Source of the DNA: Macrostomum lignano | Taxonomy: Eukaryota | Reading direction: 5' to 3' | NCBI GenBank assembly: GCA_002269645.1 | Contig: NIVC01001358.1 | Coordinates: forward strand, 5,580-69,579 | DNA length: 64,000 nucleotides | Part shown: positions 1-26,461 of the stretch, piece after piece | Position numbering within the stretch: position 1 is the stretch's first letter | How the letters are laid out: every line of letters starts with the position of its first letter | The notes under the pieces: generated by a model | Seen by the model: only the letters and a program-made list of their open reading frames with translations | Databases searched by the model: none | Told to the model about the DNA's origin: nothing | Translations under genes and position numbers: made by a program

Positions 1-1225
1 ATACTTATATTGCATTTAGCCTAGGCATATCTACTCTAGTCTGCCTATCCTCTACCTATGTCTGTTCTCTCAATCATTATATTTTTACTTTTTCCCTCTC
101 TTAATTCCTTTATATCATGCTTCTCAATTATCTCCCATCTTTGCCCTCCCCAATTCCCTCCTATCCTGCCTATCCCCAATTCCCTCCTATCCTGCCCACC
201 CCCCCAATTCCCTCCTATCCTGCCCACCCCCCAATTCCCTCCTATCTTGCCCACCCCCCAATTCCCTCCTATCCTGCCCACCCCCCAATTCCTTCCTATC
301 CTGCCCATCCCCCAATTTCCGCCATCCTGCCCTTCAATCTTTTCACCCTTGGGTTTTAAGCTATAAACCCAAGGCAATTCAAAATCTAGAAATGGATTTC
401 AAATTGGAAAATTGAATTCAGCATTTCAAGCACCTTTCAAAAAGGCGAAACTATAGAGCTAGAAAATATGGAACTATTTAACTACCTTAAGTTCAATAAG
501 TTATAGTTGGATATTGCCAACTCTTTTCCAGGTGCCTCTATCTAGCTAATGCTAACAAAAATGTTGCAAGGTGTACTTTAATATTATATTTGTTCTAGTA
601 AGCAGTTTTTCTGTGTCTCCCATTCTACCCCACCTTTCCCTCCCGTTCTACCCTTCCATTCCTTCCCATTCTACCCCTCCATTCCCTCCCATTCTACCCC
701 CACCATTCCCTCCCATTCTACCCTTCCATTCCCTCACATTCTACCCCCTCCATTCCCTCCCATTCTACCCTTCCATTCCTTCCCATTCTACCCTCTATGC
801 CTTCCATATACCCTCAATACTCTCCCTATACCCTCCATACCCTTCTATACCCATTCTTACCCTCCATATACCCTCCATACCATCCCTATACCCTCCATAC
901 CATTCCTATACCCTCAATACCATCCCTATACCCTCCATACCATCCCTATACTCTCCTTATAACCTCTCCATACCCTCCATACCCTCCATACTTTTTCTAT
1001 ACCCACCCATGGACTCCCTGTACCCTCTATGCCCTCCCTATACTCTCCATACCCTCCTGCTTTTCCTATCCTTCCCGCGTTATACTTTTCCCTATCCAGC
1101 CTCTACTATTCCCTCTTTCCACCTCCAGCGCCTCCCCCTCTCTAGCCCCTACCCTCTCTTCCTTTACTTTCCAGCCCCCATCCTCTACTCCCCTCCAGCG
1201 CCCACCCTCTTCTCCCATCAGCCCC

Positions 1226-2135
1226 TACCCTCTCCTCCACTCCAGCGCCCTCCCTCTCCTCCACTCCAGCGCCCTCCCTCTCCTCCACTCCAGGGCCCTC
1301 TCTCTCCACTCCAGCGCCCTCCCTCTCCTCCACTCCAGCGCCCTCCCTCTCCTCCACTCCAGCGCCCTCCCTCTCCTCCACTCCAGCGCCCTCCCTCTCC
1401 TCCACTCCAGCGCCCTCCCTCTCCTCCACTCCAGCGCCCTCCCTCTCCTCCACTCCAGCGCCCTCCCTCTCCTCCACTCCAGCGCCCTCCCTCTCCTCCA
1501 CTCCAGGGCCCTCTCTCTCCTCCACTCCAGCGCCCTCCCTCTCCTCCACTCCAGCGCCCTCCCTCTCCTCCACTCCAGCGCCCTCCCTCTCCTCCACTCC
1601 AGCGCCCTCCCTCTCTTCCACTCCAGCGCCCTCCCTCTCCTCCACTCCAGCGCCCTCCCTCTCCTCCACTCCAGCGCCCTCCCTCTCCTCCACTCCAGCG
1701 CCCTCCCTCTCCTCCACTCCAGCGCCCTCCCTCTCCTCCACTCCAGCGCCCTCCCTCTCCTCCACTCCAGCGCCCTCCCTCTCCTCCACTCCAGCGCCCT
1801 CCCTCTCCTCCACTCCAGCGCCCTCCCTCTCCTCCACTCCAGCGCCCTCCCTCTCCTCCACTCCAGCGCCCTCCCTCTCCTCCACTCCAGCGCCCTCCCT
1901 CTCCTCCACTCCAGCGCCCTCCCTCTCCTCCACTCCAGCGCCCTCCCTCTCCTCCACTCCAGCGCCCTCCCTCTCCTCCACTCCAGCGCCCTCCCTCTCC
2001 TCCACTCCAGCGCCCTCCCTCTCCTCCACTCCAGCGCCCTCCCTCTCCTCCACTCCAGCGCCCTCCCTCTCCTCCACTCCAGCGCCCTCCCTCTCCTCCA
2101 CTCCAGCGCCCTCCCTCTCCTCCACTCCAGCGCCC
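1226..2135. repeat. 24-bp minisatellite (ccctccctctcctccactccagcg)n, about 38 copies, left arm
   Basis: Direct reading; it produces the spurious (PPSPPLQR)n and (EGAGVEER)n ORFs. Confidence 0.97.
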
Positions 2136-3235
2136 ACCCTCTACTCTCCTTGGTTATCCCTTCGTTACGCTCTTCCCTCCTCTCTGTTTTACTTACTGTG
2201 TCATGCATAACCCGTCTGCTACAGTGTTCTTAAATAGCCTTTTATACCCTCCTCTTTCCCTAGCCCCTCCTCCCCCGGCGGCTCCCCTTCTCGTAGCTCT
2301 GCTAATAAAATCGTAATTCTTCTTCTCTTCAGAATAATTTGCCCAGCTGCGAACTGTGATGGTGCATACCGGGTACTCGCAATTTAAAAAGCGTATGCTT
2401 CTTACTGATTTACTGATTTAATTCCGACGCAACCAAGCAAATCGTTTACTTTCAAGTCCGTGCATTTTCGTTCGGCGTTAATGCCGTGTGGCGTTGGTGT
2501 AATACTATCGCGAAATTCAATTTCCAATGTCATTATCTAACTATTGTCGCTTTTCTGTATTACAACTATATACAATACTTCTGCATTTATTGACGTAACA
2601 TTGTGCCAATAATGTCACATTGTGTGGCCTCAATATGAATCTGTTGCTGAATGCAACTTATAGCCCATTGACCAGTTTAATCGCTTGAAATACATTGTAA
2701 TGTAATACTGTATCGCTTTTGGCAATCGAAACGAGACTTTAGCCAGACTCCTCACTGATCCAAATGCTCCTCAAGCAAAGGTACGAGTATATGGAAAGCA
2801 GACTGAGCTCCGCAGACTTAGTATATTTGATCTTCGGATCGCGGATAGAACCAAGGAAATCTTGGTACGTAAATAAAATTGGAGTCACTTTTCCTACTTC
2901 CACTTTCCCTGCTCTTTCCCTGACCACAGTCTGTGCCCCAGGCTCAAGTTAGACCAACGCAAAATACTAACCTGAATAGGAAGCAAGCAACTCACTTCCC
3001 ACTCTAGTCTTTTTCTGCCACTGTTGTCTTGCAATACTCGCAAAGATCTCGTATGGCGTCCTATTTGAATTGGCGCGTCTCGTTAACGTAGTCGAAAGCA
3101 ATACTGGTGCCAATTATTTGTGTCGATCAAGTTTCCTAGAGAATGATTTGTTGATAACTGTATATTCGCTGTCTTAGAGCTGCACGCTGTGTTTAACCAT
3201 TACTTTGTCGTAGAGGAGCTGATGAAGGGAGGCGT

Positions 3236-3760
3236 TGGGGCGGACCTTTTGGAGGGGCGGAGCTGATGGGGGGCGGTAGCGGCGGAGCTTTTGGAGGGGC
3301 GGAGCTGATGGGGGCGGTAGCGGCGGAGCTTTTGGAGGGGCGGAGCTGATGGGGGCGGTAGGAGCGGAGCTGATGGGGGGCGGTAGCGGCGGAGCTTTTG
3401 GAGGGGCGGAGCTGATGGGGGCGGTAGGAGCGGAGCTGATGGGGGCGGTAGGGGCGGAGCTGATGGGGCGGTAGCGGCGGAGCTTTTGGAGGGGCGGAGC
3501 TGATGGGGGCGGTAGGAGCGGAGCTGATGGGGGCGGTAGGGGCGGAGCTGATGGGGGGCGGTAGGGCGGAGCTGATGGGGGCGGTAGCGGCGGAGCTTTT
3601 GGAGGGGCGGAGCTGATGGGGGCGGTAGGAGCGGAGCTGATGGGGGCGGTAGGGGCGGAGCTGATGGGGGCGGTAGGGGCGGAGCTGATGGGGGCGGTAG
3701 CGGCGGAGCTTTTGGAGGGCGGAGCTGATGGAGGGGGGTCGAAGGGGCGGAGTTGATGGA
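3236..3760. repeat. G-rich inner minisatellite (ggggcggagctgatgggggcggta-type), left arm; shorter mirror at about 7390-7580
   Basis: Direct reading. Confidence 0.92.
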
Positions 3761-4434
3761 GGATGGTTTTTCTATTTATTCGACCGATTGAAGTATACAC
3801 AACGTATATCGTCATTCAGTCAAGTTTTGAACCCAGTCATACAAAATACTCGTATCTTGTCAGTCAAGTTGAGAATCCCCACTGACAAAGCAACATTGAA
3901 AAAAGCCGCCACTCTATGCGCCAGTGAGCTAGCTTCTAGCTTGGACTATTCTGAAATAAAAGATACGAGAAAACTGAGGCGTAGCTTTAATCCGTCCAAC
4001 TCTCGCACACCGCGATCCCCTTCCCCCACTTCATTCCTCAACCCAGGTCGTCTTGTGGCGTATAGCTATAAGTTGCGTCACTCGCAAGATTGAGAGACAG
4101 TGCAGAGACAGTCGAAGCTTATAGGGACGGAGCTTATGGAGGGGGAGGCCGGTAGAGGTGGACTTGTGGGAGGGAGGACTTCTCACTCACAATTCAACCC
4201 TCGAGTTTCGCAAATAAGTCGCCGCGAGTGAATCAATAATAACGTCAGTCGAGCAAAATCAACACAATTATTTTTTTGCAATATGCAGTTAGAATCACAA
4301 ATGCTTAAGAACGATCCCTCGCACGCTGAAGTGCGGCGACTCTGCGGGGCATCCCCAAGATGAGGCGGCGCAGAAAGTCCTGGGGAAGCTGCTGCCAAGC
4401 GTTTTCAATGGCATGACGCAGCTCCGCAACATTC

Positions 4435-5860
4435 TGATGGGTTCGGCCTTTTTAAGCCTGTAGCTCTGGGCCTCAGAACTCAGAAATGAATCACTTAGAA
4501 CTCTGGCTTCTCACTCCTGTCAGATGGTCAGCCCCGTGGTAGCTGGATTGTGTGGCGAGCAGCAAGGTCCTATAGCTAAGGGAAGACAGCGAGTCGAGAG
4601 ACAAGCAGGGAGAATTTGAAAGGTAGAGATTAGCTAACCGCGGATTAACTAACCCGCTGCCACCAGTCCGTGCGCCCCGGCTCACCAAACCATGCAGCTA
4701 CCTGTATTCCCTGCACACCGGAGGCGCCGTGGAAACAAGGCGGCCCAATCAGCTACTCAGCCCAATTTAAAAGCTGTGTTTGCAGCTCCCGTGAGATAGC
4801 AGCTGCATTATAGAGAAAATGATGCTCAATGAGCTTTTTCATGCTCAATTTCAGTATCATGATGAGGACGCACTTTTTCCCAAATCCCGCGCTAGCACAT
4901 GGGCTCGAAACTTACTAGCCTACTAACAGTGGGCAAGGGGCATTTTTATCTTTTTTCTGCAAATTGTCATAGAATCTATACTAGATATAATGTCTGGCCA
5001 TACTAGTAATAATACTGCCAGCAGTAGTCTAAGACTCCAATTCAATCTAAAGTGTGAAGTGAATTAAGGAGAAGGTTAAATCTAACAGTTATCTTTGTCG
5101 GCTTTATTTCTTTGTTCGCCGATGGCTCAGATGAGTAGCTAAGCTAGTAGGCGCCGGTCACAGTGGACCAATGGCAAGGCAGTTCTCAGTCGACCAATCT
5201 AACAAATCAGTGAGCAAAACTGCCAAAAGTGCAGAATCGGCGCCAGAGATGTACTTTGTGCACTCTAGGGTAGCCAAGCGGCTCGGGTAAATGAATCATG
5301 CGGTCTCTGAGGTTCGAGTTAGCCTATCATCAGCGCTATGAGAGGCTAGTTGGCGCGTTGAAGGCTAAAAGTACATATCTTCGTATTTAGCAATGTAATA
5401 GTACATGTAGCTACCCCATAGACTCGCCACCGCAAGAATCCCCTGCACAAGTCCCCTCTGTACCTGCATGGCCAACGCGATCTAGTCCCAGCAGTGTCCC
5501 TTATCATCGGCTATGACTTCGAGATTGACAGCAAAAAGACACTAGTTGGCAGGTAAGTGCAAAGCCCCTTCTAGTCGGAAGCCCGATTTCGAGAGTCCCG
5601 GTGTGGTGAGCCAGGGCGCACGGGCTGGTGGCAGCAAGTTAGTTGATCTGCGGATTAGCTAATTTCTACTTTCAAAATTCTCCCTGCTCGTCTCTCGCTG
5701 TCCCTCTCTTAGCTATAGGACCTAGACTGCTCGCCACACGATCAAGCTACCATGGGGCTGACCATCTGACAGGAGTGGGGGGCCAGGTCTCTAATTGATT
5801 TATTTCTGAGCCTGAGGCCCGAAGGCTTCCCTAACAAGGAGCCCGAAGGTCGAAACCCAT
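4435..5860. mobile_element. Putative old non-autonomous element bounded by diverged inverted repeats of about 250 bp (about 4435-4690 / 5600-5860)
   Basis: 4510-4540 cactcctgtcagatggtcagccccgtggtagc matches the reverse complement of about 5745-5778. ctatagctaag, gggagaattt and gctgccaccagtccgtgcgccc also have inverted counterparts. Many mismatches; no TSD found. Confidence 0.6.
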
Positions 5861-6403
5861 CAATCAGTTTAGTTTCAATTTAAAACACTTGCCTCGTTTT
5901 GAGGCCTGTTAACCAGTTCCAAGGTCTACTACTTATCTCAATGTAAATGCAAATTCTCAGGCTTTATTTTTAGTGTGTAATTTTAGCCATATTTAGACGG
6001 CCTCTCCGACATGGTACATGTAATTGGATTGAGCCTTGAAAGTACTCAGCAACATTATACATAAAGTGGCGCACAATGAATTAAGACCACCTAACACAAA
6101 TTCGAACTTTTATAGTTTCATAACCTTCACAGATTGCGGAAGCATTTAATCTAATCAGTTATAGATAACCGTGGTATCAATCAGTAAAATTATAGTTATG
6201 TGTTGTGTAATTACTCACAATTGAGTCTGTTTAATTGAAGTCCTTATCTCACAATCGAATATGATAAGTCACACAGTAATAAGACCACTTAATTAATTGG
6301 GCTAAAAGGTAGGTGCTACAACAGTGGGGCCCCTGCTGATTCCAAAGTCCAAAACATCAAGTTCAATACAACTCCAAGCAAAAATGATCTCGAACTCTCC
6401 TAG

Positions 6404-7150
6404 AATGGGAAAGGCAAAGCTCTATCGCCTGAATCGTGTAGGAAAATCAGGGCCCTGTTCGACCAAGGAGTTTCCCAGCGTGCCAAAGTCACGTACGCAG
6501 AAAACGTGCGTCCAGCAAGCACTCAGGCGCCACAGCAGCACTGGCAAAACAGACTGTGGCTCAAGACCTGGCAGGGCACCGAAAACTGACCACCGACTGG
6601 ATCGACGAATTGTGCGAATGCCCGAGTCCAACCGTCGGCTAACCGCTGTGGACATCAGCCGTAAACTTTTGGTGTCCAGCTGCACCCCATGACTGTCCGC
6701 CGCCGTCTGGTAGCTGCCGGACTGCATGGCCGCATTGCTAGGAAGAAGCCATTCATCTCCGACAAAAACCGGAAGCGGCGCTTGAACTGGGCGAAGCAAC
6801 ATGCAAGCTCTACACCCCAGGACTGGGGCCAAGGTCATCTGGAGTGATGAGAGCAAATTTTCCCGCACTGGTTCTGATGGTCGCCGGTATGTGCGCCACC
6901 GAGCTGGTGAGGAATTCGATTCCAGGTGCCCCGTTGGTTCCATGAAGCATGTAGATGGCAATGTCATGGTGTGGGCTGCATTCTCCAGAGCTGGACCTGG
7001 GCCAATAACTCGCATTGAGGGCATCATGGACAGAGGCTGTAGATGCGCTGCCAGTTTCAGCAGGACAACGATCCGAAGCTTGCTGAGAACAACATCCGCA
7101 CCATGGACTGGCAATCCAATTGAGAATCTGTGCAACTGGGTCGAGCTGGA
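6404..7150 (+). pseudogene. Decayed Tc1/mariner (Tc1-like DD34E-type) transposase
   Basis: Across frameshifts: MGKAK.., GRAPKTDHRLDRRIVR..RRLTAVDI, TVRRRLVAAGLHGRIARKKPFIS..RRLNWAKQH, VIWSDESKF, VMVWAAFS, FQQDNDPK (cagtttcagcaggacaacgatccgaag) and NPIENL. The SPDL motif is deleted; no TIRs identified. Confidence 0.92.
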
Positions 7151-7338
7151 CTGGGTTCATAACTTCACCGAATGACGATAGCTGCATGTGGATCTAATAT
7201 CCCCACGATTACTAACCAAAGAAATAAAATGTCTAGCTTTTGATGAGATTGTGAGACTACATGTACATTACAGTATACACATGTATAAACTATACTAGAC
7301 AAACAACTACACTACCAGCGTAGCTCGAATACACGTAC

Positions 7339-10300
7339 ACGTTGTGTATACTTCAATCGGTCGAATAAATAGAAAAACCATCCTCCATCAACTCCGCCCC
7401 TTCGATCCACCTCCATCAGCTCCGCCCCTACCGCCCCCCATCAGCTCCGCTCCTAACGCCCCCATCAGCTCCGCCCCTCCAAAAGCTCCGCCGCTACCGC
7501 CCCCATCAGCTCCGCCCCTCCAAAAGCTCCGCCGCTACCGCCCCCCATCAGCTCCGCCCCTCCAAAAGGTCCGCCCCAACGCCTCCCTTCATCAGCTCCT
7601 CTACGACAAAGTAATGGTTAAACACAGCGTGCAGCTCTAAGACAGCGAATATACAGTTATCAACAAATCATTCTCTAGGAAACTTGATCGACACAAATAA
7701 TTGGCACCAGTATTGCTTTCGACTACGTTAACGAGACGCGCCAATTCAAATAGGACGCCATACGAGATCTTTGCGAGTATTGCAAGACAACAGTGGCAGA
7801 AAAAGACTAGAGTGGGAAGTGAGTTGCTTGCTTCCTATTCAGGTTAGTATTTTGCGTTGGTCTAACTTGAGCCTGGGGCACAGACTGTGGTCAGGGAAAG
7901 AGCAGGGAAAGTGGAAGTAGGAAAAGTGACTCCAATTTTATTTACGTACCAAGATTTCCTTGGTTCTATCCGCGATCCGAAGATCAAATATACTAAGTCT
8001 GCGGAGCTCAGTCTGCTTTCCATATACTCGTACCTTTGCTTGAGGAGCATTTGGATCAGTGAGGAGTCTGGCTAAAGTCTCGTTTCGATTGCCAAAAGCG
8101 ATACAGTATTACATTACAATGTATTTCAAGCGATTAAACTGGTCAATGGGCTATAAGTTGCATTCAGCAACAGATTCATATTGAGGCCACACAATGTGAC
8201 ATTATTGGCACAATGTTACGTCAATAAATGCAGAAGTATTGTATATAGTTGTAATACAGAAAAGCGACAATAGTTAGATAATGACATTGGAAATTGAATT
8301 TCGCGATAGTATTACACCAACGCCACACGGCATTAACGCCGAACGAAAATGCACGGACTTGAAAGTAAACGATTTGCTTGGTTGCGTCGGAATTAAATCA
8401 GTAAATCAGTAAGAAGCATACGCTTTTTAAATTGCGAGTACCCGGTATGCACCATCACAGTTCGCAGCTGGGCAAATTATTCTGAAGAGAAGAAGAATTA
8501 CGATTTTATTAGCAGAGCTACGAGAAGGGGAGCCGCCGGGGGAGGAGGGGCTAGGGAAAGAGGAGGGTATAAAAGGCTATTTAAGAACACTGTAGCAGAC
8601 GGGTTATGCATGACACAGTAAGTAAAACAGAGAGGAGGGAAGAGCGTAACGAAGGGATAACCAAGGAGAGTAGAGGGTGGGCGCTGGAGTGGAGGAGAGG
8701 GAGGGCGCTGGAGTGGAGGAGAGGGAGGGCGCTGGAGTGGAGGAGAGGGAGGGCGCTGGAGTGGAGGAGAGGGAGGGCGCTGGAGTGGAGGAGAGGGAGG
8801 GCGCTGGAGTGGAGGAGAGGGAGGGCGCTGGAGTGGAGGAGAGGGAGGGCGCTGGAGTGGAGGAGAGGGAGGGCGCTGGAGTGGAGGAGAGGGAGGGCGC
8901 TGGAGTGGAGGAGAGGGAGGGCGCTGGAGTGGAGGAGAGGGAGGGCGCTGGAGTGGAGGAGAGGGAGGGCGCTGGAGTGGAGGAGAGGGAGGGCGCTGGA
9001 GTGGAGGAGAGGGAGGGCGCTGGAGTGGAGGAGAGGGAGGGCGCTGGAGTGGAGGAGAGGGAGGGCGCTGGAGTGGAGGAGAGGGAGGGCGCTGGAGTGG
9101 AGGAGAGGGAGGGCGCTGGAGTGGAGGAGAGGGAGGGCGCTGGAGTGGAGGAGAGGGAGGGCGCTGGAGTGGAGGAGAGGGAGGGCGCTGGAGTGGAAGA
9201 GAGGGAGGGCGCTGGAGTGGAGGAGAGGGAGGGCGCTGGAGTGGAGGAGAGGGAGGGCGCTGGAGTGGAGGAGAGGGAGGGCGCTGGAGTGGAGGAGAGA
9301 GAGGGCCCTGGAGTGGAGGAGAGGGAGGGCGCTGGAGTGGAGGAGAGGGAGGGCGCTGGAGTGGAGGAGAGGGAGGGCGCTGGAGTGGAGGAGAGGGAGG
9401 GCGCTGGAGTGGAGGAGAGGGAGGGCGCTGGAGTGGAGGAGAGGGAGGGCGCTGGAGTGGAGGAGAGGGAGGGCGCTGGAGTGGAGGAGAGGGAGGGCGC
9501 TGGAGTGGAGAGAGAGGGCCCTGGAGTGGAGGAGAGGGAGGGCGCTGGAGTGGAGGAGAGGGAGGGCGCTGGAGTGGAGGAGAGGGTAGGGGCTGATGGG
9601 AGAAGAGGGTGGGCGCTGGAGGGGAGTAGAGGATGGGGGCTGGAAAGTAAAGGAAGAGAGGGTAGGGGCTAGAGAGGGGGAGGCGCTGGAGGTGGAAAGA
9701 GGGAATAGTAGAGGCTGGATAGGGAAAAGTATAACGCGGGAAGGATAGGAAAAGCAGGAGGGTATGGAGAGTATAGGGAGGGCATAGAGGGTACAGGGAG
9801 TCCATGGGTGGGTATAGAAAAAGTATGGAGGGTATGGAGGGTATGGAGAGGTTATAAGGAGAGTATAGGGATGGTATGGAGGGTATAGGGATGGTATTGA
9901 GGGTATAGGAATGGTATGGAGGGTATAGGGATGGTATGGAGGGTATATGGAGGGTAAGAATGGGTATAGAAGGGTATGGAGGGTATAGGGAGAGTATTGA
10001 GGGTATATGGAAGGCATAGAGGGTAGAATGGGAAGGAATGGAAGGGTAGAATGGGAGGGAATGGAGGGGGTAGAATGTGAGGGAATGGAAGGGTAGAATG
10101 GGAGGGAATGGTGGGGGTAGAATGGGAGGGAATGGAGGGGTAGAATGGGAAGGAATGGAAGGGTAGAACGGGAGGGAAAGGTGGGGTAGAATGGGAGACA
10201 CAGAAAAACTGCTTACTAGAACAAATATAATATTAAAGTACACCTTGCAACATTTTTGTTAGCATTAGCTAGATAGAGGCACCTGGAAAAGAGTTGGCAA

Positions 10301-10813
10301 TATCCAACTATAACTTATTGAACTTAAGGTAGTTAAATAGTTCCATATTTTCTAGCTCTATAGTTTCGCCTTTTTGAAAGGTGCTTGAAATGCTGAATTC
10401 AATTTTCCAATTTGAAATCCATTTCTAGATTTTGAATTGCCTTGGGTTTATAGCTTAAAACCCAAGGGTGAAAAGATTGAAGGGCAGGATGGCGGAAATT
10501 GGGGGATGGGCAGGATAGGAAGGAATTGGGGGGTGGGCAGGATAGGAGGGAATTGGGGGGTGGGCAAGATAGGAGGGAATTGGGGGTGGGCAGGATAGGA
10601 GGGAATTGGGGGGGTGGGCAGGATAGGAGGGAATTGGGGGATAGGCAGGATAGGAGGGAATTGGGGAGGGCAAAGATGGGAGATAATTGAGAAGCATGAT
10701 ATAAAGGAATTAAGAGAGGGAAAAAGTAAAAATATAATGATTGAGAGAACAGACATAGGTAGAGGATAGGCAGACTAGAGTAGATATGCCTAGGCTAAAT
10801 GCAATATAAGTAT
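7339..10813. repeat. Right arm of giant inverted repeat
   Basis: Begins acgttgtgtatacttcaatcggtcg (reverse complement of 3781-3805). Mirrors the left arm, with about 330 bp fewer inner-array repeats. Confidence 0.97.
8679..9589. repeat. 24-bp minisatellite, mirror copy in right arm
   Basis: (cgctggagtggaggagagggaggg)n with variant units at mirrored positions. Confidence 0.97.
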
Positions 10814-10964
10814 ATAACTAGCAATCTTCGCCCCCGTTGGGGGACATCTGGATAGAATCTCTGTTCTCTACAAGTAACAAAAAGATAGCCAAAAAAGCCT
10901 TCACAAAGACGACAGACAAACTGCTCAAATAAAGTGTAATGCAAAAAGAAATCATCCCAAGACA

Positions 10965-11065
10965 GCAAGCATCCCCAAATAGCAAGCATCCCCCAGATTG
11001 CAAGCATCCCCCAGATAGCAAGCATCCCCCAGATAGCAAGCATCCCCAAATAGTAAGCATCCACC
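10965..11065. repeat. Short 18-bp tandem repeat (agcaagcatcccccagat)n
   Basis: About 5-6 copies read directly. Confidence 0.85.
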
Positions 11066-11174
11066 ATACAATAAGTACCCGGTAGCTAGTGCTACAATTT
11101 CCTTAGCTCTATAGTGGCTCCTTTAACATTGGCATGACGCTTACTTTTACGTTTGAAATTGTGTAAATTTTATG

Positions 11175-13185
11175 TTTGACATGGTGGCTCCTAAATGTTT
11201 GACATGGTGGCTCTTTTATGTTCGACATGGTGGCTCTTTAATGTTCGACATGGTGGCTCTTTAATGTTAGACATGGTGGCTCTTTAATGTTCGACATGGT
11301 GGCTCTATAATGTTAGACATGGTGGCTCTTTAATGTTAGACACGGTGGCTCTTTAATGTTCGACATGGTGGCTCTTTAATGTTCGACATGGTGGCTGTTT
11401 AATGTTAGACATGATGGCTCTTTAATGTTTGACATTGCGGCTCTTTAATATTTGACATGGTGGCTCTTTTATGTTGGACATGGTGGTTCTTTTATGTTCT
11501 ACATGGTGGCTCTTTTATGCTTGACATGGTGGCTCTTTAATGTTTGACATGATGGCTCTTTTATGTTCGACATGGTGGCTCTTCTATGCTTGACATGGTG
11601 GCTCTTTACTGTTTGACATGGAGTCACATATATGTTTGACATGGTGGCTCTTTTATGTTTGACAAGGTGGCTCTTTAATGTTTTACGAGGTGGCTCTTTA
11701 ATGTTCTTCATGGTAGCTCTTTTATGTTAGACATGATGGCTTTTTAATTTTCGACATGGTAGCACTTTAATGTTAGACATGGTGGCTCTTAAATGTTTGA
11801 CGTGGTGGCTCTTTTATGTTCGACATGGTGGCTCTTTAATGTTCGACATGGTGGCTTTTTAATGTTAGACATGGTGGCTCTTTAATGTTAGACATGGTGG
11901 CTCTTTAATATTCGACATGGTGGCTCTTTAATGTTAGACATGGTGGCTCTTTAATATTCGACATGGTGGCTCTATAATGTTAGACATAGTGGCTCTTTAA
12001 TGTTCGACATGGTGGCTCTATAATGTTAGACATGGTGGCTCTTTAATATTCGACATGGTGGCTCTTTAATGTTTGACATTGAGGCTCTTTAATGTTTGAC
12101 ATGGTGGCTCTTTTATGTTGGACATGGTGGTTCTTTTATGTTCGACATGGTGGCTCTTTTATGTTTGACATGGTGGCTCCTTACTGTTTGACCTGGATTC
12201 ACATATATGTTTGACATGGTGGCTCTTTTATGTTCGACATGGTGGCTCTTTTATGCTTGACATGGTGGCTCTTTACTGATTGACATGGAGTCACATATAT
12301 GTTTGACATGGTGGCTCTTTTATGTTTGACATGGTGGCTCTTTTATGTTTGACATGGTGGCTCTTTTATGTTTGACATGGTGGCTCTTTAATGTTAGACA
12401 TAGTGGCTCTTTAATGTTCGACATGGTGGCTCTTTAATGTTAGACATGGTGGCTCTTTAATATTCGACATGGTGGCTCTTTAATGTTAGACATAGTGGCT
12501 CTTTAATGTTCGACATGGTGGCTCTATAATGTTAGACATGGTGGCTCTTTAATATTCGACATGGTGGCTCTTTAATGTTTGACATTGAGGCTCTTTAATG
12601 TTTGACATGGTGGCTCTTTTATGTTGGACATGGTGGTTCTTTTATGTTCGACATGGTGGCTCTTTTATGTTTGACATGGTGGCTCTTTACTGTTTGACCT
12701 GGATTCACATATATGTTTGACATGGTGGCTCTTTTATGTTTGACATGGTGGCTTTTTTATGTTTTACATGGTGGCTCTTTAATGTTAGACATGGTGGCTC
12801 TTTAATATTCGACATGGTGGCTCTTTAATGTTTGACATTGAGGCTCTTTAATGTTTGACATGGTGGCTCTTTTATGTTGGACATGGTGGTTCTTTTATGT
12901 TCGACATGGTGGCTCTTTTATGTTTGACATGGTGGCTCTTTACTGTTTGACCTGGATTCACATATATGTTTGACATGGTGGCTCTTTTATGTTTGACATG
13001 GTGGCTTTTTTATGTTTTACATGGTGGCTCTTTAATGTTAGACATGGTGGCTCTTTAATGTTCGACATGGTGGCTCTTTAATGTTCGACATGGTGGCTCT
13101 TTAATGGTCGACATGATGGCTCTTTAATGTTCGACATGGTGGCTCTTTAATGTTTGACATGGTGGCTCTTTAATGTTTGACATTG
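11175..13185. repeat. 23-bp satellite (gacatggtggctctttaatgttN)n with 253-bp higher-order blocks
   Basis: Variant gacctggattcacatat at 12190, 12696 and 12949; variant gacattgagg at 12075, 12581 and 12834 (spacings 506 and 253 bp = 22 and 11 monomers). Confidence 0.93.
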
Positions 13186-13242
13186 TGCTTTTTTGTGTTT
13201 AGCATTTGTGTTTTTAAGGTTTTTGAATAAAAAAATCTTTTT

Positions 13243-13308
13243 GCACTACTAAGATTCGAACCCAGGTCGCTGCATTAGCATTCCAGTCTGTTCGCATCTA
13301 TGCTATCT
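13243..13308 (-). pseudogene. Degenerate tRNA-derived sequence (tRNA-His-like; possible SINE head)
   Basis: The minus strand reads gatagcatagatg (A-box-like) ... gcagcgacctgggttcgaatcttagt, with an intact T-arm (ctggg-TTCGAAT-cttag) resembling the tRNA-His 3' half. No acceptor stem can form. Confidence 0.45.
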
Positions 13309-13654
13309 CTTGTCAATTGGAATACGTGAATTGTGGCCCTTATAATTAAATTCTTATAGCAAATCGGTTAGAGTAAAAAGTTATGACATAATCAATTTCT
13401 CAGTCAGCCAATATCAGTGTCAATTTAAGTTGGCAATATTGTTACGCAATTTAAATCAAGTTTTGTGTGCATTTGTTCGGCACTGTTTTCAACTGGTTGT
13501 GATGTAATCTTTATCACAATTGGAATTCAGTCAGTCAGTTTTTTCTCTAGCATTCTTACAATGCATTTCAGGTCGAAAGAGCTGCTTGACCTTTGCAAAA
13601 AAGCATGTTTTTCGAATATTTAATCCCTTTAATATTGAGCAATTTCTTAGCCAA

Positions 13655-13793
13655 GATGCATGTACCGTCCCAGGAAAATTTCTGATCGAATGGTGCAAGT
13701 TTGAAGAAAATCGGTTGAGCCATTTTTTCTGAAATCTATCGCATACCTACCTACCTACCTACCCACAGACAACTCATTTTTAGTATATAGGAT
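13655..13793 (+). mobile_element. Possible 3' end of a non-autonomous Helitron-like (Lep1/HINE-type) element
   Basis: aagtttgaagaaaatcggttgagcc, then a (ccta)n microsatellite, acagac and tagtatatag; this layout resembles Lep1-type Helitron ends recalled from memory, not confirmed by search. Confidence 0.4.
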
Positions 13794-15204
13794 TCATATG
13801 ACAATAAATATAAAGTAAATACACAACTGAACTAATATTAATTAATTTATTCATTAGGAAGGTTATTGGCTTCTTTTTCTTTTTCTATAGCTAGGCCTAT
13901 ACATTTCATAATATTGGCCTACAACAATTATTAGATTGTTAGACAAGAAGCATAAAATATAATAGGGTCTAAAATAGCTAGCCTATTTTAGACCATATAC
14001 ATTTTATAGACTAATAATTTAGTAGGCCTACTCTTAATAGCTATAGGCCTATTACTAAAATAAAATAACATAGCTAGCTACCTATCATAGGCCTAAAATT
14101 GACAAGGCCTTTTGTGTTTCTTTTCATGGTACAAGTATAGAGTGATATTAAAATAAAGAATACAACTAAGAGCTAAAAAATTATACTAAATACCTGGCAA
14201 TAAAGAAGAAAAACAAAGTAGATTAAAGCAGAATGCAGTACAAAATGGCCCACATATTGATAAGAAGGCCAATATAAGGCCAATAACTGGGTGAGCCAAG
14301 GCCACCTAGCTAGCTAGCCATCAAGCTTTTACTTTTTTTTAAGCCAATTAATATCTGCCTGCAACAGGACCATTTCATCCTTATTGTCATTGTCAAGAGG
14401 TCCAAGTAGCTAGTTTATTTTACAATCATTAACCTCCTAATTAAATTTCATTCAGTCATGTCATACATGGCTTTTTGTGCAAGCTAGGGCGACACATTTC
14501 CAAAGTTTTCGACTCTAGACACAAACTGCTTTATTAGTCTAGGTCTTGAATTCATACATACTAACACAATGCCCTATAGGCTATACTAATTAAATATGTC
14601 GAGCCATTATAATATTGGTTGTGCGTAGGCTTTTGAATTGCGCGCCATAACTGCCCAATACAAGTATATACAGTCCGCTTTTAATCAGAAGGAAAGCATG
14701 TTATGCTGGCAGTCGACATGCCATCTACCCTATCTAATCGTAGAAAACGTTTACCTTTTCTACCGATTAAATCCATGCTGGTCGGGTGCATTGTTGCTGC
14801 TGCTGCTGCAAGCGTGTTAAAATGTTAGTTCAATAAAACAAAACCTATAATATCGTTAATATAAAGAGCTAAAAAGCGAAGCTAACAAGCATTTGTGTAA
14901 GTTTGACAACAAGTTTAGTTTATTTAAATGTTTCACTTTTAAAAGCTAGTCATGGGATTTAGCGTTTTTGGGAGTTTTTAAATGTTACCTTTTTCACAGC
15001 CGCGCGCGCGGGCCCGCCAGTTGAGCCCCTGGAGCCCGTAGATTTTATTTTATTAGCTTTTCTGCTTTAAACTAAATTTGATTGTCTTACGGCCAGCAGT
15101 TACAAAATAAGCACTACACTAGGTTTAGACTTAGGCCTACACCCGGTAAATTCGATCGTTAATAATTTTCAGTGACAAATTAAATTATGCATGCTTTTAT
15201 AATT

Positions 15205-16553: not shown

Positions 16554-17223
16554 NNNNNNNNNNNNNNNNNNNNNNNNNNNNNNNNNNNNNNNNNNNNNNN
16601 NNNNNNNNNNNNNNNNNNNNNNNNNNNNNNNNNNNNNNNNNNNNNNNNNNNNNNNNNNNNNNNNNNNNNNNNNNNNNNNNNNNNNNNNNNNNNNNNNNNN
16701 NNNNNNNNNNNNNNNNNNNNNNNNNNNNNNNNNNNNNNNNNNNNNNNNNNNNNNNNNNNNNNNNNNNNNNNNNNNNNNNNNNNNNNNNNNNNNNNNNNNN
16801 NNNNNNNNNNNNNNNNNNNNNNNNNNNNNNNNNNNNNNNNNNNNNNNNNNNNNNNNNNNNNNNNNNNNNNNNNNNNNNNNNNNNNNNNNNNNNNNNNNNN
16901 NNNNNNNNNNNNNNNNNNNNNNNNNNNNNNNNNNNNNNNNNNNNNNNNNNNNNNNNNNNNNNNNNNNNNNNNNNNNNNNNNNNNNNNNNNNNNNNNNNNN
17001 NNNNNNNNNNNNNNNNNNNNNNNNNNNNNNNNNNNNNNNNNNNNNNNNNNNNNNNNNNNNNNNNNNNNNNNNNNNNNNNNNNNNNNNNNNNNNNNNNNNN
17101 NNNNNNNNNNNNNNNNNNNNNNNNNNNNNNNNNNNNNNNNNNNNNNNNNNNNNNNNNNNNNNNNNNNNNNNNNNNNNNNNNNNNNNNNNNNNNNNNNNNN
17201 NNNNNNNNNNNNNNNNNNNNNNN
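16554..17223. other. Assembly gap (670 N)
   Basis: Run of n. Confidence 1.
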
Positions 17224-22179: not shown

Positions 22180-22995
22180 AAGAGAGCGGAAGTAGAGGGA
22201 CGTGAAATGGAAGTAGATGGAAGTGAAATGGAAGTAGATGGACGTGAAATGGAAGTAGATGGACGTAAAGCGGAAGTAGATGGAAGTGAAGCGAAGTAGA
22301 TGGAAGTGAAATGGAAGTAGAGGGACGTGAAATGGAAGTAGATGGACGTAAAGCGGAAGTAGATGGAAGTGAAGTGGAAGTAGAGGGACGTGAAATGGAA
22401 GTGAAGCGAAGTAGATGGAAGTGAAATGGAAGTAGAGGGACGTGAAATGGAAGTAGATGGACGTAAAGCGGAAGTAGATGGAAGTGAAGCGAAGTAGATG
22501 GAAGTGAAATGGAAGTAGAGGGACGTGAAATGGAAGTAGATGGACGTAAAGCGGAAGTAGATGGAAGTGAAGCGAAGTAGATGGAAGTGAAATGGAAGTA
22601 GAGGGACGTGAAATGGAAGTAGATGGACGTAAAGCGGAAGTAGATGGAAGTGAAGTGGAAGTAGAGGGACGTGAAATGGAAGTGAAGCGAAGTAGATGGA
22701 AGTGAAATGGAAGTAGAGGGACGTGAAATGGAAGTAGATGGACGTAAAGCGGAAGTAGATGGAAGTGAAGTGGAAGAAGAAGGACGTGAAATGGAAGTAG
22801 ATGGAAGTGAAGTGGAAGAAAAGGACGTGAAAGGGAAGTAGATGGAAGTGAAGTGGAAGAAAAGGACGTGAAATGGAAGTAGAGGGACGTGAAATGGAAG
22901 TAGATGGAAGTGAAATGGAAGTAGATGGAAGTGAAATGGAAGTAGATGGAATTGAAATGGAAGTAGATGGAAGTGAAATGGAAGTAGATGGAAGT
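22180..22995. repeat. Purine-rich minisatellite of about 20 bp (gaagtagatggaagtgaaat-type), interrupted by the LTR element and resuming at 26741-26830
   Basis: The same units flank both ends of the retroelement. Confidence 0.92.
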
Positions 22996-23274
22996 TGTAA
23001 AGACTTCACTTTAGATTGTAGAACGATATAAGCTTGATACGAGGCAAGCCACTGCGATTTTTATTGTAAGTATTGAGCACGATACGTTTAGTGGATAAGG
23101 CTTAGGGGTGGAGAACAAAAGTAGCCAGATTGAAGAACGTACATGAGTAAGAGAGTACATCAAGATATTGTAGAAAGGCGCACAGAGCGAAACAGGTAAA
23201 AACACCACCCCCAAACACTGAATAAAGTACAAGCTAACATCACTAACAAAAATCAACCCAGCCAAGTCACCACA
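22996..23274 (-). repeat. 3' LTR (279 bp)
   Basis: Preceded on the minus strand by the polypurine tract ggggaggag (23275-23283). Confidence 0.96.
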
Positions 23275-23360
23275 CTCCTCCCCACGAAGATTAAGCGTTG
23301 GATTAAAACGGGAATAAAAGACGCAAATCAGTTCACAGTCCATAGAAGAACAGTTCAGAG

Positions 23361-26300
23361 TCACTCGTAGCGCAGCCGGTCAGGTTCGGCTCTCGCCCTG
23401 GTCGAACGTCGAAGTAGCGCCTCAGAGCTCAACTCTGGTGCCTGGCCAGGCGTCTCTGCAGGAGCCTCTGGTTGATCGTCAGGCACCTCGACACATGGCG
23501 GTTGCTCGGCTTCGGAAGGCGCCGGAGGCTCCGGCGGCTTGCGCACTTGATCGATGTGCCGACGGACTTCTCGACCATCGTCGAACTGGCAAGAGAAAGA
23601 CGCAGCCCCAGAGCAGTTGGTCACAACAGCAGGCTTCCACCTGCCGTCAGCAGCGAAGTCCCTCGCGACGACTGCGTCGCCCATCTCGATGCGGCGGTCA
23701 TGGGCATGGGCGTCGTGTTGTTGCTTCTGCATTGCTTGTTGGAGCGCCACCCTGGCCTGTAGGTCAGGCCGAACTCGATCGAGCAGTGTGTGCAGCCGCC
23801 TCCCCATCAGCAATTTGCAAGGTGGCGCGCCGGTCGTCGCATGGGGCGTCACACGGTAGGTAAGCAGGAAGCGCGCCACTCGATCTTCTAGTGAGCCGTC
23901 TTTTTGCTTAGCGAGTGACTTCTTCAGGGTCTGGACAGCGCGCTCCGCTTGGCCATTTGACGCCGGGTGGTACGGGGCAGTTCGTACGTGCCGGATGCCG
24001 TTCCGCTGCAGAAAATCTGCCATTTCATCGCTGACCAGGTTGCGCCCATTGTCCGTCACGATGATGTCCGGCAGCCCATGTGTAGCGAAGCTCTGCCGCA
24101 GCCGCTGGATGGTTGCCGTGGAAGTTGCTGACGCCAACACATGTACCTCCATCCACTTGGAATGGGCGTCGACAATCACCAGCAGCATTTTCCCTTCGAT
24201 CGGACCCGCAAAATCCAGATGAAGGCGCGACCACGGCCTGTCAGGCCAGGCCCAGGGATGCAGCGGCGCAGGCCCCGGTGACTTCTGCAGCTCCTGGCAG
24301 TCCGAACAAGCGCCGGCGAGCTGCTCAATTGCCTCGTCCAGCTTTGGCCACCAGAAGAAGCTGCGGGCCAGCGCCTTCATTCTAGATGCGCCCTGGTGTC
24401 CTTGGTGCAAACAATGGAGAAGGGCTGTCCGGCCTGCCTCTGGAACGATGACTCGAGTTCCCCAGAGAAGGCAGCCGTCTTGAGTACTCAGCTGGTCGGC
24501 CCTGGATCTGTACGGCTGCAACTCCGGCACGGTCCGCTCAGGCCAGTTGCCGACCTCCGTGAAGCGCAGTGCCTTTGACAGGATCGGGTCAGTTCGGGTC
24601 CAGGCTCGAATGTCGCCGGCGGTCACTGGCCCTTCGCCCAGCATGTCCATGACCAGGACAACGTCCGCAGGTGTCGGGGCCTTCGTCGGTCTTTCCGGCA
24701 GTGGCAGTCGGCTCAGTGCGTCTGCACGCAGTAGTGATTTGCCAGATCGGTGTTCCATCGAGTAGCTGTAGCCCGCCAGGATGAGCGCCCACCTCTGAAT
24801 CCTTCCGGACGCCATGGCGGGAATTGGCTTAGACTCATGCAGGAGTCCTAGCAACGGCTTGTGGTCGCTGACGAGGGTGAATTTCCGGCCGTAAAGGTAA
24901 GAGTGAAATCTTTTTACCCCGAAAACGATCGCCAGAGCTTCTTTGTCCAGTTGCGAGTACTTCGCCTCGGCATCGTGCAGGGAACGCGAAGCGAAAGCGA
25001 TCGGTCGATCGCAACCGTCAACCCGATGACTGATGACGGCGCCGATGCCGTACGGAGAGGCATCGCACTCCAGCACCAACGGCTTTGTGTCGTCGAAATG
25101 CGCGAGGACCGGCGCTTTGGCGAGCAGCGCCTTGCACTTCTTAAAGGCGGCATCCTGCGAAGCGCCCCAGCACCAGTTGGCGCCTTGGTTTAGCAAGCGG
25201 TGCAGCGGGGCCAACTCGGCTGACAGGTTCGGCAGGAACTTGCTGTAATAGTTGACCATTCCGAGGAAGCTGCGTAGCTGGGTCACGTCCTGCGGTGCCG
25301 GAGCGTCCACGATGGCACGCACTTTGTCTTGCAGGGGATGCAGGCCAGCGGCATCGATCCGATGACCCAGATAGCAGACGCTGTCCTGCATGAAGTTACA
25401 CTTGCTCAGGCCGCAGCGCAGTCCACTTTGGTGCAGCCGTTGCAGCACCTGTTCCAGCGATTGCAAATGGCTCTCGTCGTCAACCCCGGTGATAATCAGG
25501 TCATCGATGAAGCAGGCCACATGGGGAATGGTCTGCAGCAGGCTGTCCATGTGGCGCTGGAAAATTCCAACGGCCGGAGCGACACCAAACGGGAGGCGGG
25601 TATAGCGAAGCAGGCCTTTGGAAGTGTTTATAGTGCAGATCTGCTGGGCAGCTTCATCGAGTGGCATCTGGGAGTAAGCCTGCGACAAGTCGAGCTTAGT
25701 GAACTTTTTCCCGCCTGCCAGCTTTGCAAAAAGTTCCTCGATTCGCGGCAAGGGGTACTTGTCCGGCTCCACGGCGAGGTTGACGGTCTGCTTAAAGTCG
25801 GCACAGATGCGCACGGTGCCGTCTGATTTCAGAACGGGAACAATCGGCGATGCATAATCTGAGCTGCTGACTGGCTTGAGCACGCCCTGCTCAATCTCCT
25901 TTTCGAGTTGAGCCTCCACCTTAGCCTTGAGCGCAAACGGAACGTTGCGAGCTTTGAAAAAGCGAGGCCGGGCATCAGGCTTCAAATGCAGTTGCACAGG
26001 TGGACCGTTGTACTGACCCAATCCGGGCTCGAAAACAGCTGCATACTTTTCCAGCAAGGCTCGGATTCTGGGGTGCTCACCGTCTTTTTGCACCTGGTTG
26101 ATGCTTCTCCAGTCAAGCGGCAAGCCGGCCAGCCAGTCCCGGCCGATCAGATTCGATCCGGAGCCCTTGACGACGAGTAGCGGTAGCTCCTTGGAGATCT
26201 CTCCGATACGCACGCAGACGTTGATTTTGCCGAGTAGAGGAACCGGCTCCCCTGAATACGTACGTAGCTGTGCGTTGGCCGGCTCCAGCTTGGGCAGCCC

Positions 26301-26460: not shown

Positions 26461-26461
26461 G

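What the first reader, a model, noticed from the sequence alone, without database searches (positions are those of the whole stretch)
1..10813. Giant foldback structure: inverted arms of at least 3.5 kb, built of minisatellite modules, around a 3.5-kb core
Seen: two near-identical arms in opposite orientation (3805 and 3475 bp), each alternating several tandem arrays with unique sequence, and a sharp shared inner boundary (3805/7339). Known: Drosophila FB and Galileo are foldback transposons with long, internally repetitive TIRs. Inference: this is either a very large, possibly undescribed foldback element of at least 10.8 kb or a recent inverted segmental duplication. Either could form a huge hairpin or dsRNA.
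Basis: partly seen in the sequence, partly recalled or inferred. Interest (0 to 1): 0.8.

Follow-up and report, generated by a model that had tools for sequence, protein, structure and literature searches.

The report
Young inverted duplication around transposon debris
Two almost identical 3.5-kb stretches of ordinary repeat-rich non-coding flatworm-like DNA face each other across 3.5 kb of dead Tc1 transposon fragments; this looks like a recent inverted duplication, not a new giant foldback transposon, and it is only modestly interesting.

Summary
Window 1-3805 and the reverse complement of 7339-10813 match with 3 substitutions, two homopolymer-length differences and one 330-nt copy-number difference in a minisatellite. 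The left arm runs off the window, so the outer ends are unknown.

The "minisatellite modules" are not a property of the arms. Minisatellites cover 38% of the whole window and 52-54% of the arms, in more than 40 unrelated arrays, including introns of host genes. The arms have no coding potential and no other copy in the window.

The 3,533-bp core has no tandem repeats. It holds decayed Tc1/mariner fragments, an older 225-nt inverted pair (84% identical) and no other transposase. A TA-flanked 32-nt inverted pair (91% identical) sits at the left arm boundary and 158 nt inside the right one. A degenerate unit of the left arm's innermost array lies 300 nt inside the core, on the left side only. This suggests the left junction is ancestral and 7338/7339 is the new breakpoint.

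Best reading (about 0.6): a recent fold-back or template-switch inverted duplication of host DNA. The host is probably a Macrostomum-like flatworm. A foldback transposon (about 0.1) and an assembly error (about 0.17) are not excluded. Neither can be tested without the flanking sequence, the genome and the reads.

The parts
1..3805 (+). Left arm, cut by the window edge. It alternates five minisatellite arrays with unique non-coding DNA: 148-332, 617-805, 746-990, 1170-2146 and 3237-3739. The largest unique block is 2147-3236.
   Evidence: no Pfam hit in six frames of 2140-3240; no Rfam hit; no tRNA
7339..10813 (-). Right arm, the reverse complement of the left arm. It has 3 substitutions and 2 homopolymer-length differences over 3474 aligned nt.
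3387..3716 (+). 330 nt of extra G-rich minisatellite units (GGGGCGGAGCTGATG family), present only in the left arm. This is the only length difference between the arms.
3806..7338 (.). Non-duplicated spacer (core), 3533 nt. It has no tandem-repeat coverage and is built of decayed transposon fragments.
3807..3838 (+). Left copy of a 32-nt inverted pair (TATCGTCATTCAGTCAAGTTTTGAACCCAGTC). It starts 2 nt after the arm ends and begins with TA. It is followed by a second direct copy of its core at 3860-3889 (73% identical).
7149..7180 (-). Right copy of the 32-nt inverted pair (29/32 identical). It ends with TA, abuts the truncation point of the Tc1 remnant and lies 158 nt inside the right arm boundary.
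   Evidence: E 1.4e-5 within the core
4114..4175 (+). Degenerate two-unit remnant of the left arm's innermost G-rich array, in the same orientation, inside the core. There is no mirror copy on the right side of the core.
   Evidence: (D1)
4317..4436 (-). C-terminal remnant of a Tc1-like transposase (…NVAELRHAIENAWQQLPQDFLRRLILGMPRRVAAL…), reading towards the left arm.
   Evidence: tblastn E down to 1e-6 with many Tc1 transposases
4468..4691 (+). Left arm of an older inner inverted repeat. Its partner is 5600-5820, 84% identical. No target-site duplication was seen.
5600..5820 (-). Right arm of the inner inverted repeat.
5220..5261 (-). Weak remnant of the Tc1 'AQSPDLNPIENLW' motif (AQSTSLAPILHFWQ), in the loop of the inner inverted repeat.
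   Evidence: recurrent weak hits, E 0.02-1
6063..7148 (+). Decayed Tc1-like element. Its 5' TIR with inner repeat (CATAAAGTGGCGCAC…AAGACCAC; …AATAAGACCAC) resembles that of the relative in L002. The transposase has frameshifts and an internal deletion, and the 3' part of the element is missing from 7148.
   Evidence: (HTH_Tnp_Tc3_2, E 4.5e-19)
7181..7338 (+). 158-nt unique segment between the right copy of the 32-nt pair and the right arm. It has no counterpart on the left side and no other copy in the window.
   Evidence: no significant fold

Best explanation
This is a recent inverted segmental duplication, a palindrome with a spacer, made of ordinary minisatellite-rich non-coding host DNA. 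It is not a mobile element.

Shown:
- The two arms of at least 3.5 kb are about 99.9% identical. They differ only inside one hypervariable G-rich array.
- The 3.5-kb spacer between them is not duplicated. It consists of old Tc1/mariner debris.

Inferred:
- The left arm plus core is the ancestral, contiguous arrangement. The right arm is the copy, and 7338/7339 is the new breakpoint.
- The copy arose by a repair or replication error: fold-back of a resected broken end, or template switching during break-induced or stalled-fork synthesis.
- The break fell in or next to the Tc1 remnant that now ends at 7148.
- The 32-nt inverted pair (3807-3838 / 7149-7180) either anchored the fold-back or is itself a short templated piece laid down at the start of unstable synthesis.
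- The 158-nt segment is a junction insertion or a retained tail. Stable copying then resumed at 3805 and ran outwards through the arm.
- The arms are identical because the event is young. All arrays but one still have the same copy number and the same variant order.

Expected consequences, not demonstrated functions: flip-flop inversion of the spacer by recombination between the arms, a site prone to hairpin formation and breakage, and a long hairpin RNA if the locus is transcribed through.
For: - Arm identity and boundaries.
- All 3 substitutions and the only length difference lie in the innermost 450 nt, inside the G-rich array. There are none in the outer 3357 nt.
- Minisatellites cover 38% of the window and 52-54% of the arms, so the arm architecture is the local background.
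- The arms have no coding or RNA signal.
- There is no further copy of arm or core in the window.
- The core contains only Tc1 remnants. It is not palindromic apart from two short inverted pairs.
- A degenerate unit of the arm's innermost array sits inside the core on the left side only. This argues that the left junction is ancestral.
- The spacer is 3533 bp. Sequenced human fold-back inverted duplications have spacers of 766-70,466 bp with a median of 3,428 bp. They show inverted homology, or in 5 of 21 junctions insertions, at the junction (PMC3907307).
- In yeast, widely spaced inverted repeats with up to 25% divergence drive fold-back in long single-stranded DNA (PMC10164571).
Against: - The simple fold-back model predicts that the new arm starts directly at the inverted homology, after removal of the non-homologous tail. 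Here 158 nt lie between them.
- There is no microhomology at 7338/7339.
- The outer junction, which must exist for a viable chromosome, is not visible.
- Copy number was not verified with reads.
- 3 mismatches in 32 nt is too many for a freshly templated copy.
- The coincidence of the arm end with the TA-flanked 32-nt sequence also fits a transposon that inserted at the edge of a 161-nt spacer.
- Zero substitutions in about 1.8 kb of unique arm DNA would also be seen after an assembly duplication or after polishing with multi-mapped reads.
Confidence: 0.6

Rival explanations
1. Assembly error. The two arms are one locus, or two haplotypes or homeologous copies of it, and a noisy long-read or hybrid assembly of a highly repetitive, partly duplicated genome wrongly placed them in inverted orientation.
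For: - There are zero substitutions in the unique arm DNA.
- The only small indels are homopolymer-length differences typical of consensus errors.
- The one large difference is a minisatellite copy number, as expected between alleles.
- The window has a sized N gap, so it is a scaffolded draft.
- The closest relative, M. lignano, has assemblies with 180-312 Mb of redundant blocks at 95% identity or more, and acknowledged assembly difficulty (PMC5730564).
- The left arm ends at the window edge, which could be a contig end.
Against: - There are no Ns between arms and core.
- A missed-adapter palindromic read would be symmetric about a point. It would not enclose 3.5 kb of non-palindromic sequence.
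- The two junctions are different, specific sequences.
- The arrays are strongly strand-asymmetric, so a false inverted join inside an array is not possible.
Confidence: 0.17
2. A giant foldback-type transposable element, or a composite element of some other kind. Its terminal inverted repeats are at least 3.5 kb and internally repetitive, and its middle domain is non-coding.
For: - The overall shape (long inverted arms with tandem arrays, a unique flanking-type segment and a middle domain without a working transposase) resembles foldback elements as described for Galileo and Tetris.
- Non-autonomous foldback copies lack ORFs.
- The outer ends are unseen, so termini and a target-site duplication cannot be ruled out.
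Against: - The arms carry five unrelated arrays separated by unique DNA, exactly like the rest of the window. Foldback elements have one family of subrepeats.
- The arms are at least twice the longest reported TIRs: 1.25 kb for Galileo and 1.7 kb for Tetris.
- There is no second copy or fragment in 64 kb.
- The core has no P-like or Mutator-like domain.
- An array unit of the arm continues into the core on one side only.
- There were no hits in metagenome contigs.
Confidence: 0.1
3. An older palindrome with an originally short spacer of about 161 nt. Its arms are kept identical by arm-to-arm gene conversion. A non-autonomous TA-targeting Tc1-like composite element (3809-7178) later inserted into it and expanded the spacer, which stabilised the structure.
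For: - The 32-nt pair is inverted, terminal and flanked by TA on both sides (3807-3808 and 7179-7180). Removing 3809-7178 plus one TA leaves a clean 161-nt spacer.
- The left end carries two direct copies of the motif and lies downstream of a Tc1 C-terminal remnant in the right orientation.
- From my own knowledge, not tested here: gene conversion keeps primate sex-chromosome palindrome arms more than 99.9% identical.
Against: - The element would have to insert within 1-3 nt of the arm/spacer boundary by coincidence.
- Its interior contains a unit of the flanking arm's array, which is unexpected for foreign DNA.
- Four of five fast-mutating arrays are identical in copy number and variant order. 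This fits one recent event better than patchy conversion.
- No other copy of the putative element or its ends was found.
Confidence: 0.13

Closest known systems
Fold-back inverted duplications with a non-duplicated spacer (human constitutional inv-dup rearrangements, Hermetz et al. 2014, PMC3907307; yeast inverted-repeat fold-back, Ait Saada et al. 2023, PMC10164571)
   Same: - An inverted copy is separated from the original by a single-copy spacer of a few kb: 3,533 bp here against a human median of 3,428 bp.
- Inverted homology lies near the spacer ends.
- There is extra sequence at the junction, as in 5 of 21 sequenced human junctions.
- Dispersed-repeat or transposon copies in opposite orientation are the likely pairing partners.
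   Different: - The inverted homology is 158 nt away from the junction instead of at it.
- There is no microhomology at the junction.
- The duplication is embedded in a gene-bearing region, so a second, unseen junction must exist.
- No terminal deletion or telomere healing is visible.
Large near-identical palindromes of sex chromosomes (human Y P1-P8; from my own knowledge, not tested here)
   Same: Arms of kilobases or more are more than 99.9% identical around a unique spacer of kilobases. The structure allows spacer inversion and arm-to-arm conversion.
   Different: Those arms carry genes and are shown by outgroup comparison to be old and homogenised by conversion. Here the arms are non-coding, the age is unknown, and the identical minisatellite states point to a recent origin.
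Foldback transposons: Drosophila FB, Galileo (P superfamily), Tetris, Tm1 (Mutator/Foldback)
   Same: Long inverted arms containing tandem repeats, a unique middle domain and no working transposase.
   Different: - Known TIRs reach 1.25 kb (Galileo) and 1.7 kb (Tetris), use one subrepeat family and have a conserved terminal flanking domain.
- Known families are multicopy and have target-site duplications of 7-10 bp.
- Here there are five unrelated arrays, as in the surrounding genome, and no other copy in the window. Termini and target-site duplication are unseen.
Tc1/mariner elements of the IR-DR type (applies to the core fragments only)
   Same: HTH_Tnp_Tc3_2 domain, a 5' TIR with an inner repeat like that of a metagenomic relative (L002), and a TA at the 5' end.
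   Different: All copies here are dead: frameshifts, an internal deletion, a missing 3' end and no detectable DDE_3 domain. They are passengers in the spacer, not the agent of the large repeat.

Membership tests
Foldback transposons (FB / Galileo / Tetris type) | Long terminal inverted repeats built from a family-specific internal tandem subrepeat plus a conserved terminal domain | tested here: inconclusive
   The arms are inverted and contain arrays. The arrays are five unrelated units interleaved with unique DNA, and minisatellites cover 38% of the whole window. The feature is therefore not specific to the arms. The terminal domain lies outside the window.
Foldback transposons (FB / Galileo / Tetris type) | Defined outer termini flanked by a target-site duplication (7 bp for Galileo, 8-10 bp for Tetris) | not testable with these tools
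   The left arm runs to window position 1. The contig could not be retrieved.
Foldback transposons (FB / Galileo / Tetris type) | Several dispersed copies with variable arm length | not testable with these tools
   No other copy or fragment of arm or core is present in the 64-kb window. No exact 24-mer match was found in metagenome contigs. The source genome is not searchable here.
Foldback transposons (FB / Galileo / Tetris type) | Middle domain encoding, or derived from, a P-like or Mutator-like transposase in autonomous copies | tested here: not met
   A six-frame Pfam scan of 3806-7338 finds only the Tc1 HTH domain. Non-autonomous foldback copies may lack any ORF, so this does not exclude a defective copy.
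Fold-back / template-switch inverted duplication | Inverted copy separated from the original by a single-copy spacer of about 0.8-70 kb | tested here: met
   The spacer is 3806-7338 (3533 bp). It is non-palindromic apart from two short inverted pairs. The range in sequenced human cases is 766-70,466 bp with a median of 3,428 bp.
Fold-back / template-switch inverted duplication | Inverted homology or microhomology exactly at the spacer/inverted-copy junction, or an insertion there | tested here: inconclusive
   A 32-nt inverted pair (91% identical) lies 1-2 nt from the left boundary and 158 nt from the right boundary. There is 0 nt of microhomology at 7338/7339. The 158 nt could be a junction insertion, but its source is not in the window.
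Fold-back / template-switch inverted duplication | One arm is contiguous with ancestral sequence and the other junction is novel | tested here: inconclusive
   A degenerate array unit of the arm family lies at 4114-4175 inside the core on the left side only. The Tc1 remnant is truncated at 7148 next to the right-hand complex junction. This is suggestive; an outgroup locus is needed.
Fold-back / template-switch inverted duplication | Arm copy number twice that of the spacer in raw reads | not testable with these tools
   No reads are available.
Tc1/mariner (core fragments only) | Tc1-type DNA-binding domain | tested here: met
   PF01498 HTH_Tnp_Tc3_2, E 4.5e-19. The best relatives are 67-74% identical Tc1 transposases from metagenomes.
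Tc1/mariner (core fragments only) | Intact DDE catalytic domain and both TIRs with a TA duplication | tested here: not met
   DDE_3 was not detected and the reading frame is broken. There is an internal deletion and the 3' part is missing from 7148. Only the 5' TIR, preceded by TA, is present.
Palindromes maintained by arm-to-arm gene conversion | Arms far more similar than the age of the structure allows, shown by an outgroup or by polymorphism | not testable with these tools
   Arm identity of about 99.9% is met. No orthologous locus or population data are available.

The most novel reading that the evidence does not exclude
The structure is one copy of an undescribed mobile foldback-like element of a macrostomid flatworm. 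Its terminal inverted repeats would be at least 3.5 kb, more than twice the longest known, and would have recruited and amplified several minisatellites. Alternatively, it is a long-lived palindrome kept identical by gene conversion that serves as a hairpin-RNA (endo-siRNA) source.
Probability: 0.08. Interest if true: 0.6.

Novelty: new member of a known kind. Interest (0 to 1): 0.25.

Why it matters
If real, this is a clean, nucleotide-resolved example of a young kilobase-scale inverted duplication in a free-living flatworm-type genome. It has a spacer of the size seen in human fold-back rearrangements, and transposon ends sit at the loop base.

It would be a useful natural case for three questions:
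- how dispersed transposon remnants seed palindromes;
- how fast minisatellites diverge after duplication (only one of five arrays has changed);
- how such structures affect genome stability in a lineage known for karyotype instability.

It does not open a new class of element. Its main practical value is as a flag for assembly validation and repeat annotation, because arms like these would be mis-called as a giant foldback transposon.

Tried and rejected
- Retrieving the source contig or left flank by exact-protein look-up. I tried the pol ORF, an ORF across the left junction and a core ORF. Nothing was on record.
- Scanning metagenome contigs for a unique 24-mer from the arm and for the 22-nt core of the inverted pair. 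There were no matches.
- A homology search with the ankyrin ORF through the word index returned nothing. The exhaustive search did work.
- Rfam on 1-14000 and tRNA search on the whole window found nothing.
- Pfam on six frames of the unique arm segment found nothing.
- Local hairpins at the junctions as the cause of the breakpoints. DNA folds of 7310-7365, 7185-7334 and 3780-3845 are no better than shuffles, with z about 0. Rejected.
- The core as a diverged continuation of the palindrome, which a haplotype mis-join would predict. Only two short inverted pairs exist in it. Rejected.
- Missed-adapter palindromic read. Rejected, because the centre is 3.5 kb of asymmetric sequence.
- G-quadruplex motif enrichment as a fork-stalling cause. 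The arms have 8-9% against 4% elsewhere, too weak to use.
- Literature on foldback elements or inverted repeats in flatworms. Nothing relevant was found.
- A hybrid-element (sister-chromatid) Tc1 transposition model. Rejected, because the new junction at 7338/7339 carries no transposon end.
- Comparison with 23 kb of M. lignano DNA (L003). It shares only the pol gene at 70% identity, so it neither confirms nor refutes the species.

Full report
**1. The observation**

The inverted repeat is real and is at the stated coordinates.
- A mirror comparison in which position i pairs with 10814-i is 100% identical over 228-3404 / 7410-10586.
- A global alignment of the left side against the reverse complement of the right side gives these blocks: 1-173, 174-226, 228-3386 (1 mismatch) and 3717-3805 (2 mismatches). 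Left 3387-3716 (330 nt) is unmatched.
- The two 1-nt shifts are C-homopolymer length differences, C4/C5 and C6/C5.
- The 330 nt are extra units of the innermost G-rich minisatellite.
- All three substitutions also lie in that array. The outer 3357 nt, including about 1.8 kb of unique sequence, have none.
- Identity stops sharply at 3805 on the left and 7339 on the right.
- The left arm reaches window position 1, so the true arm length and the outer ends are unknown.

**2. Context**

The window is a gene-bearing region of an animal genome that is saturated with minisatellites.
- Tandem arrays with a period of 7 nt or more cover 38% of the 64 kb. More than 40 arrays have unrelated units.
- Coverage is 52-54% in the arms, 38.5% in the remainder and 0% in the core.
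- Several arrays lie within the span of host-gene exons. These are ankyrin-repeat exons on the minus strand at 31.6-39.2 kb and two Cys-loop channel transmembrane exons at about 59.7 and 62.2 kb, which are separated by a 2-kb array.
- The closest relatives of the ankyrin ORF are two Macrostomum lignano proteins, at 64% and 57% identity.
- The best named relatives of the window's Gypsy pol are also M. lignano, at 63-69%.
- A 23-kb M. lignano locus shows the same style of minisatellites and (CAGA)n.
- The source is therefore probably a macrostomid flatworm, possibly M. lignano itself. This is not proven.
- The M. lignano genome is described as unusually rich in simple and tandem repeats (15%), with large redundant blocks and a difficult assembly (PMC5730564).

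"Arms built of minisatellite modules" is therefore the background texture of this genome. It is not a signature of a special element.

**3. The arms**

The arms have no long non-repeat ORF. There is no Pfam hit in six frames of the 1.1-kb unique block, no Rfam family and no tRNA. No other copy or fragment of arm or core exists in the window. A unique 24-mer from the arm is absent from the metagenome collection.

**4. The core (3806-7338)**

The core is not palindromic. Self-comparison finds only two inverted pairs:
- 4468-4691 / 5600-5820, 84% identical;
- 3807-3838 / 7149-7180, 29/32 identical.

A six-frame Pfam scan finds only the Tc1 DNA-binding domain.

Transposon content:
- On the right, a Tc1-like element starts at about 6063. 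Its 5' TIR and inner repeat resemble those of a metagenomic relative (L002).
- Its transposase (HTH_Tnp_Tc3_2, E 4.5e-19) is broken by frameshifts and an internal deletion. It stops at 7148, in the NPIENLW region.
- On the left, a Tc1 C-terminal remnant reads on the minus strand at 4317-4436.
- A weak NPIENLW-like remnant lies at 5220-5261 on the minus strand.

The spacer is therefore old transposon debris, far more decayed than the arms are diverged.

**5. The junctions**

- The 32-nt pair begins 2 nt after the left arm ends. It is bounded by TA on both sides (3807-3808 and 7179-7180).
- On the right, 158 nt (7181-7338) separate the pair from the arm. This segment is unique in the window.
- There is no microhomology at 7338/7339, and no significant local hairpin at either junction.
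- A degenerate two-unit remnant of the left arm's innermost array lies at 4114-4175 inside the core, in the same orientation. It has no mirror on the right.
- I read this as evidence that left arm plus core is the ancestral contiguous sequence and that 7338/7339 is the novel breakpoint. This is inference.

**6. Mechanism**

The anatomy matches inverted duplications formed by fold-back or template switching.
- In 21 sequenced human cases, a single-copy spacer of 766-70,466 bp (median 3,428 bp) separates the copies. Inverted repeats (82-95% identical Alu or L1) or 2-8 bp of microhomology sit at the junction. Five of the 21 have inserted sequence there (PMC3907307).
- In yeast, inverted repeats up to 30 kb apart and up to 25% divergent fold back efficiently in long single-stranded DNA (PMC10164571).
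- Here the spacer is 3,533 bp, and a 32-nt, 91%-identical inverted pair sits at the loop base.

The misfit is the 158 nt between the right copy of the pair and the arm. A simple fold-back would remove that tail. Three variants remain open:
- (a) The pair anchored the fold-back. The 158-nt tail was retained as a bulge, and synthesis resumed at the first template base beyond the stem. This would explain why arm identity starts 1-2 nt from the pair.
- (b) Low-processivity break-induced synthesis began within the Tc1 remnant at 7148. It copied 3838-3807, made an excursion of 157 nt to a template elsewhere, and then returned to 3805 for stable copying. Template switching during break-induced replication is established knowledge, not tested here. 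The weak point is 3 mismatches in 32 nt.
- (c) 3809-7178 is a TA-targeting non-autonomous Tc1-derived element that inserted at the edge of a 161-nt spacer of an existing palindrome. The weak points are the positional coincidence and the arm-type array unit inside the supposed element.

I consider a recent duplication of type (a) or (b) the most likely. Four of five fast-mutating arrays are identical in copy number and variant order. This points to one recent event rather than patchy conversion.

**7. Rivals**

- Assembly artefact. It cannot be excluded without reads. In its favour are identical unique DNA, homopolymer-type differences, an allele-like copy-number difference and a draft scaffold with an N gap. 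Against it are that there are no Ns between the parts, that the centre is 3.5 kb of asymmetric sequence, and that the two junctions are specific and different.
- Foldback transposon. It cannot be excluded either, because its defining features (termini, target-site duplication, copy number) lie outside the window. Nothing inside the window requires it. The arm architecture equals the background. The arms are at least twice the longest reported TIRs: 1.25 kb for Galileo and 1.7 kb for Tetris. The core carries no P-like or Mutator-like domain.

**8. Verdict**

This is a new instance of a known kind of structural feature. Interest is low to moderate. The decisive data are the left flank, genome-wide copy number, long reads and an outgroup locus.

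Noticed in passing
window 22996-26740: A young LTR retrotransposon on the minus strand. It has 279-bp LTRs that are 100% identical, TG…CA ends and a 5-bp target-site duplication (GAAGT). It carries an intact 1027-aa protease-RT-RNaseH-integrase ORF (23361-26444) but no gag region; relatives are 1200-1340 aa. It sits inside a 21-nt minisatellite (22185-22995 / 26741-26808).
   Followed up: partly
window 4468-4691 and 5600-5820: An older inverted repeat is nested in the spacer of the large one. Its arms are about 225 nt and 84% identical, with a loop of about 900 nt. No target-site duplication was seen. The loop holds a weak Tc1 motif remnant. It could be a decayed long-TIR Tc1 element or an earlier small inverted duplication at the same spot.
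   Followed up: partly
window 174 and 227 (mirror 10640 and 10587): The only small indels between the arms are C-homopolymer length differences (C4/C5 and C6/C5), 53 nt apart. They look like consensus errors of a long-read or 454-type assembly rather than real differences.
   Followed up: no
window 31658-39207 (minus strand): Ankyrin-repeat ORF pieces at 31658-33007, 36941-37549 and 37921-39207, separated by minisatellites and a (CAGA)n-type tract. The best relatives are Macrostomum lignano A0A1I8FIP3 (64%) and A0A1I8JN36 (57%).
   Followed up: partly
window about 59700-59880 and 62190-62320 (plus strand): Two exons of a Cys-loop ligand-gated ion channel (Neur_chan_memb; TM1 and TM3 regions). 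They are separated by an intron filled with a 2-kb array of 24-nt units.
   Followed up: no
whole window: 38% of the sequence is minisatellite arrays: more than 40 arrays, periods 9-281 nt, mostly unrelated units, many strongly purine/pyrimidine strand-asymmetric. Several exceed 1-2 kb (11168-13187, 43684-45200, 52353-53770, 60034-62089).
   Followed up: partly
window 16554-17223: A 670-N gap, so the window comes from a scaffolded draft assembly. The flanking 16-20 kb region is much more AT-rich (27-30% GC) than the rest.
   Followed up: no
window 56232-56300 (minus strand): An isolated short Tc1 transposase fragment (NPIENLW region), far from the core. This shows that Tc1 debris is scattered through the region.
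   Followed up: no
window 7324-7350: The last 15 nt of the spacer (GAATACACGTAC) resemble the last 15 nt of the left arm in direct orientation (GTATACACAACGT). This gives a small imperfect palindrome across the right junction. Its fold is not better than shuffles, so its meaning is unclear.
   Followed up: yes
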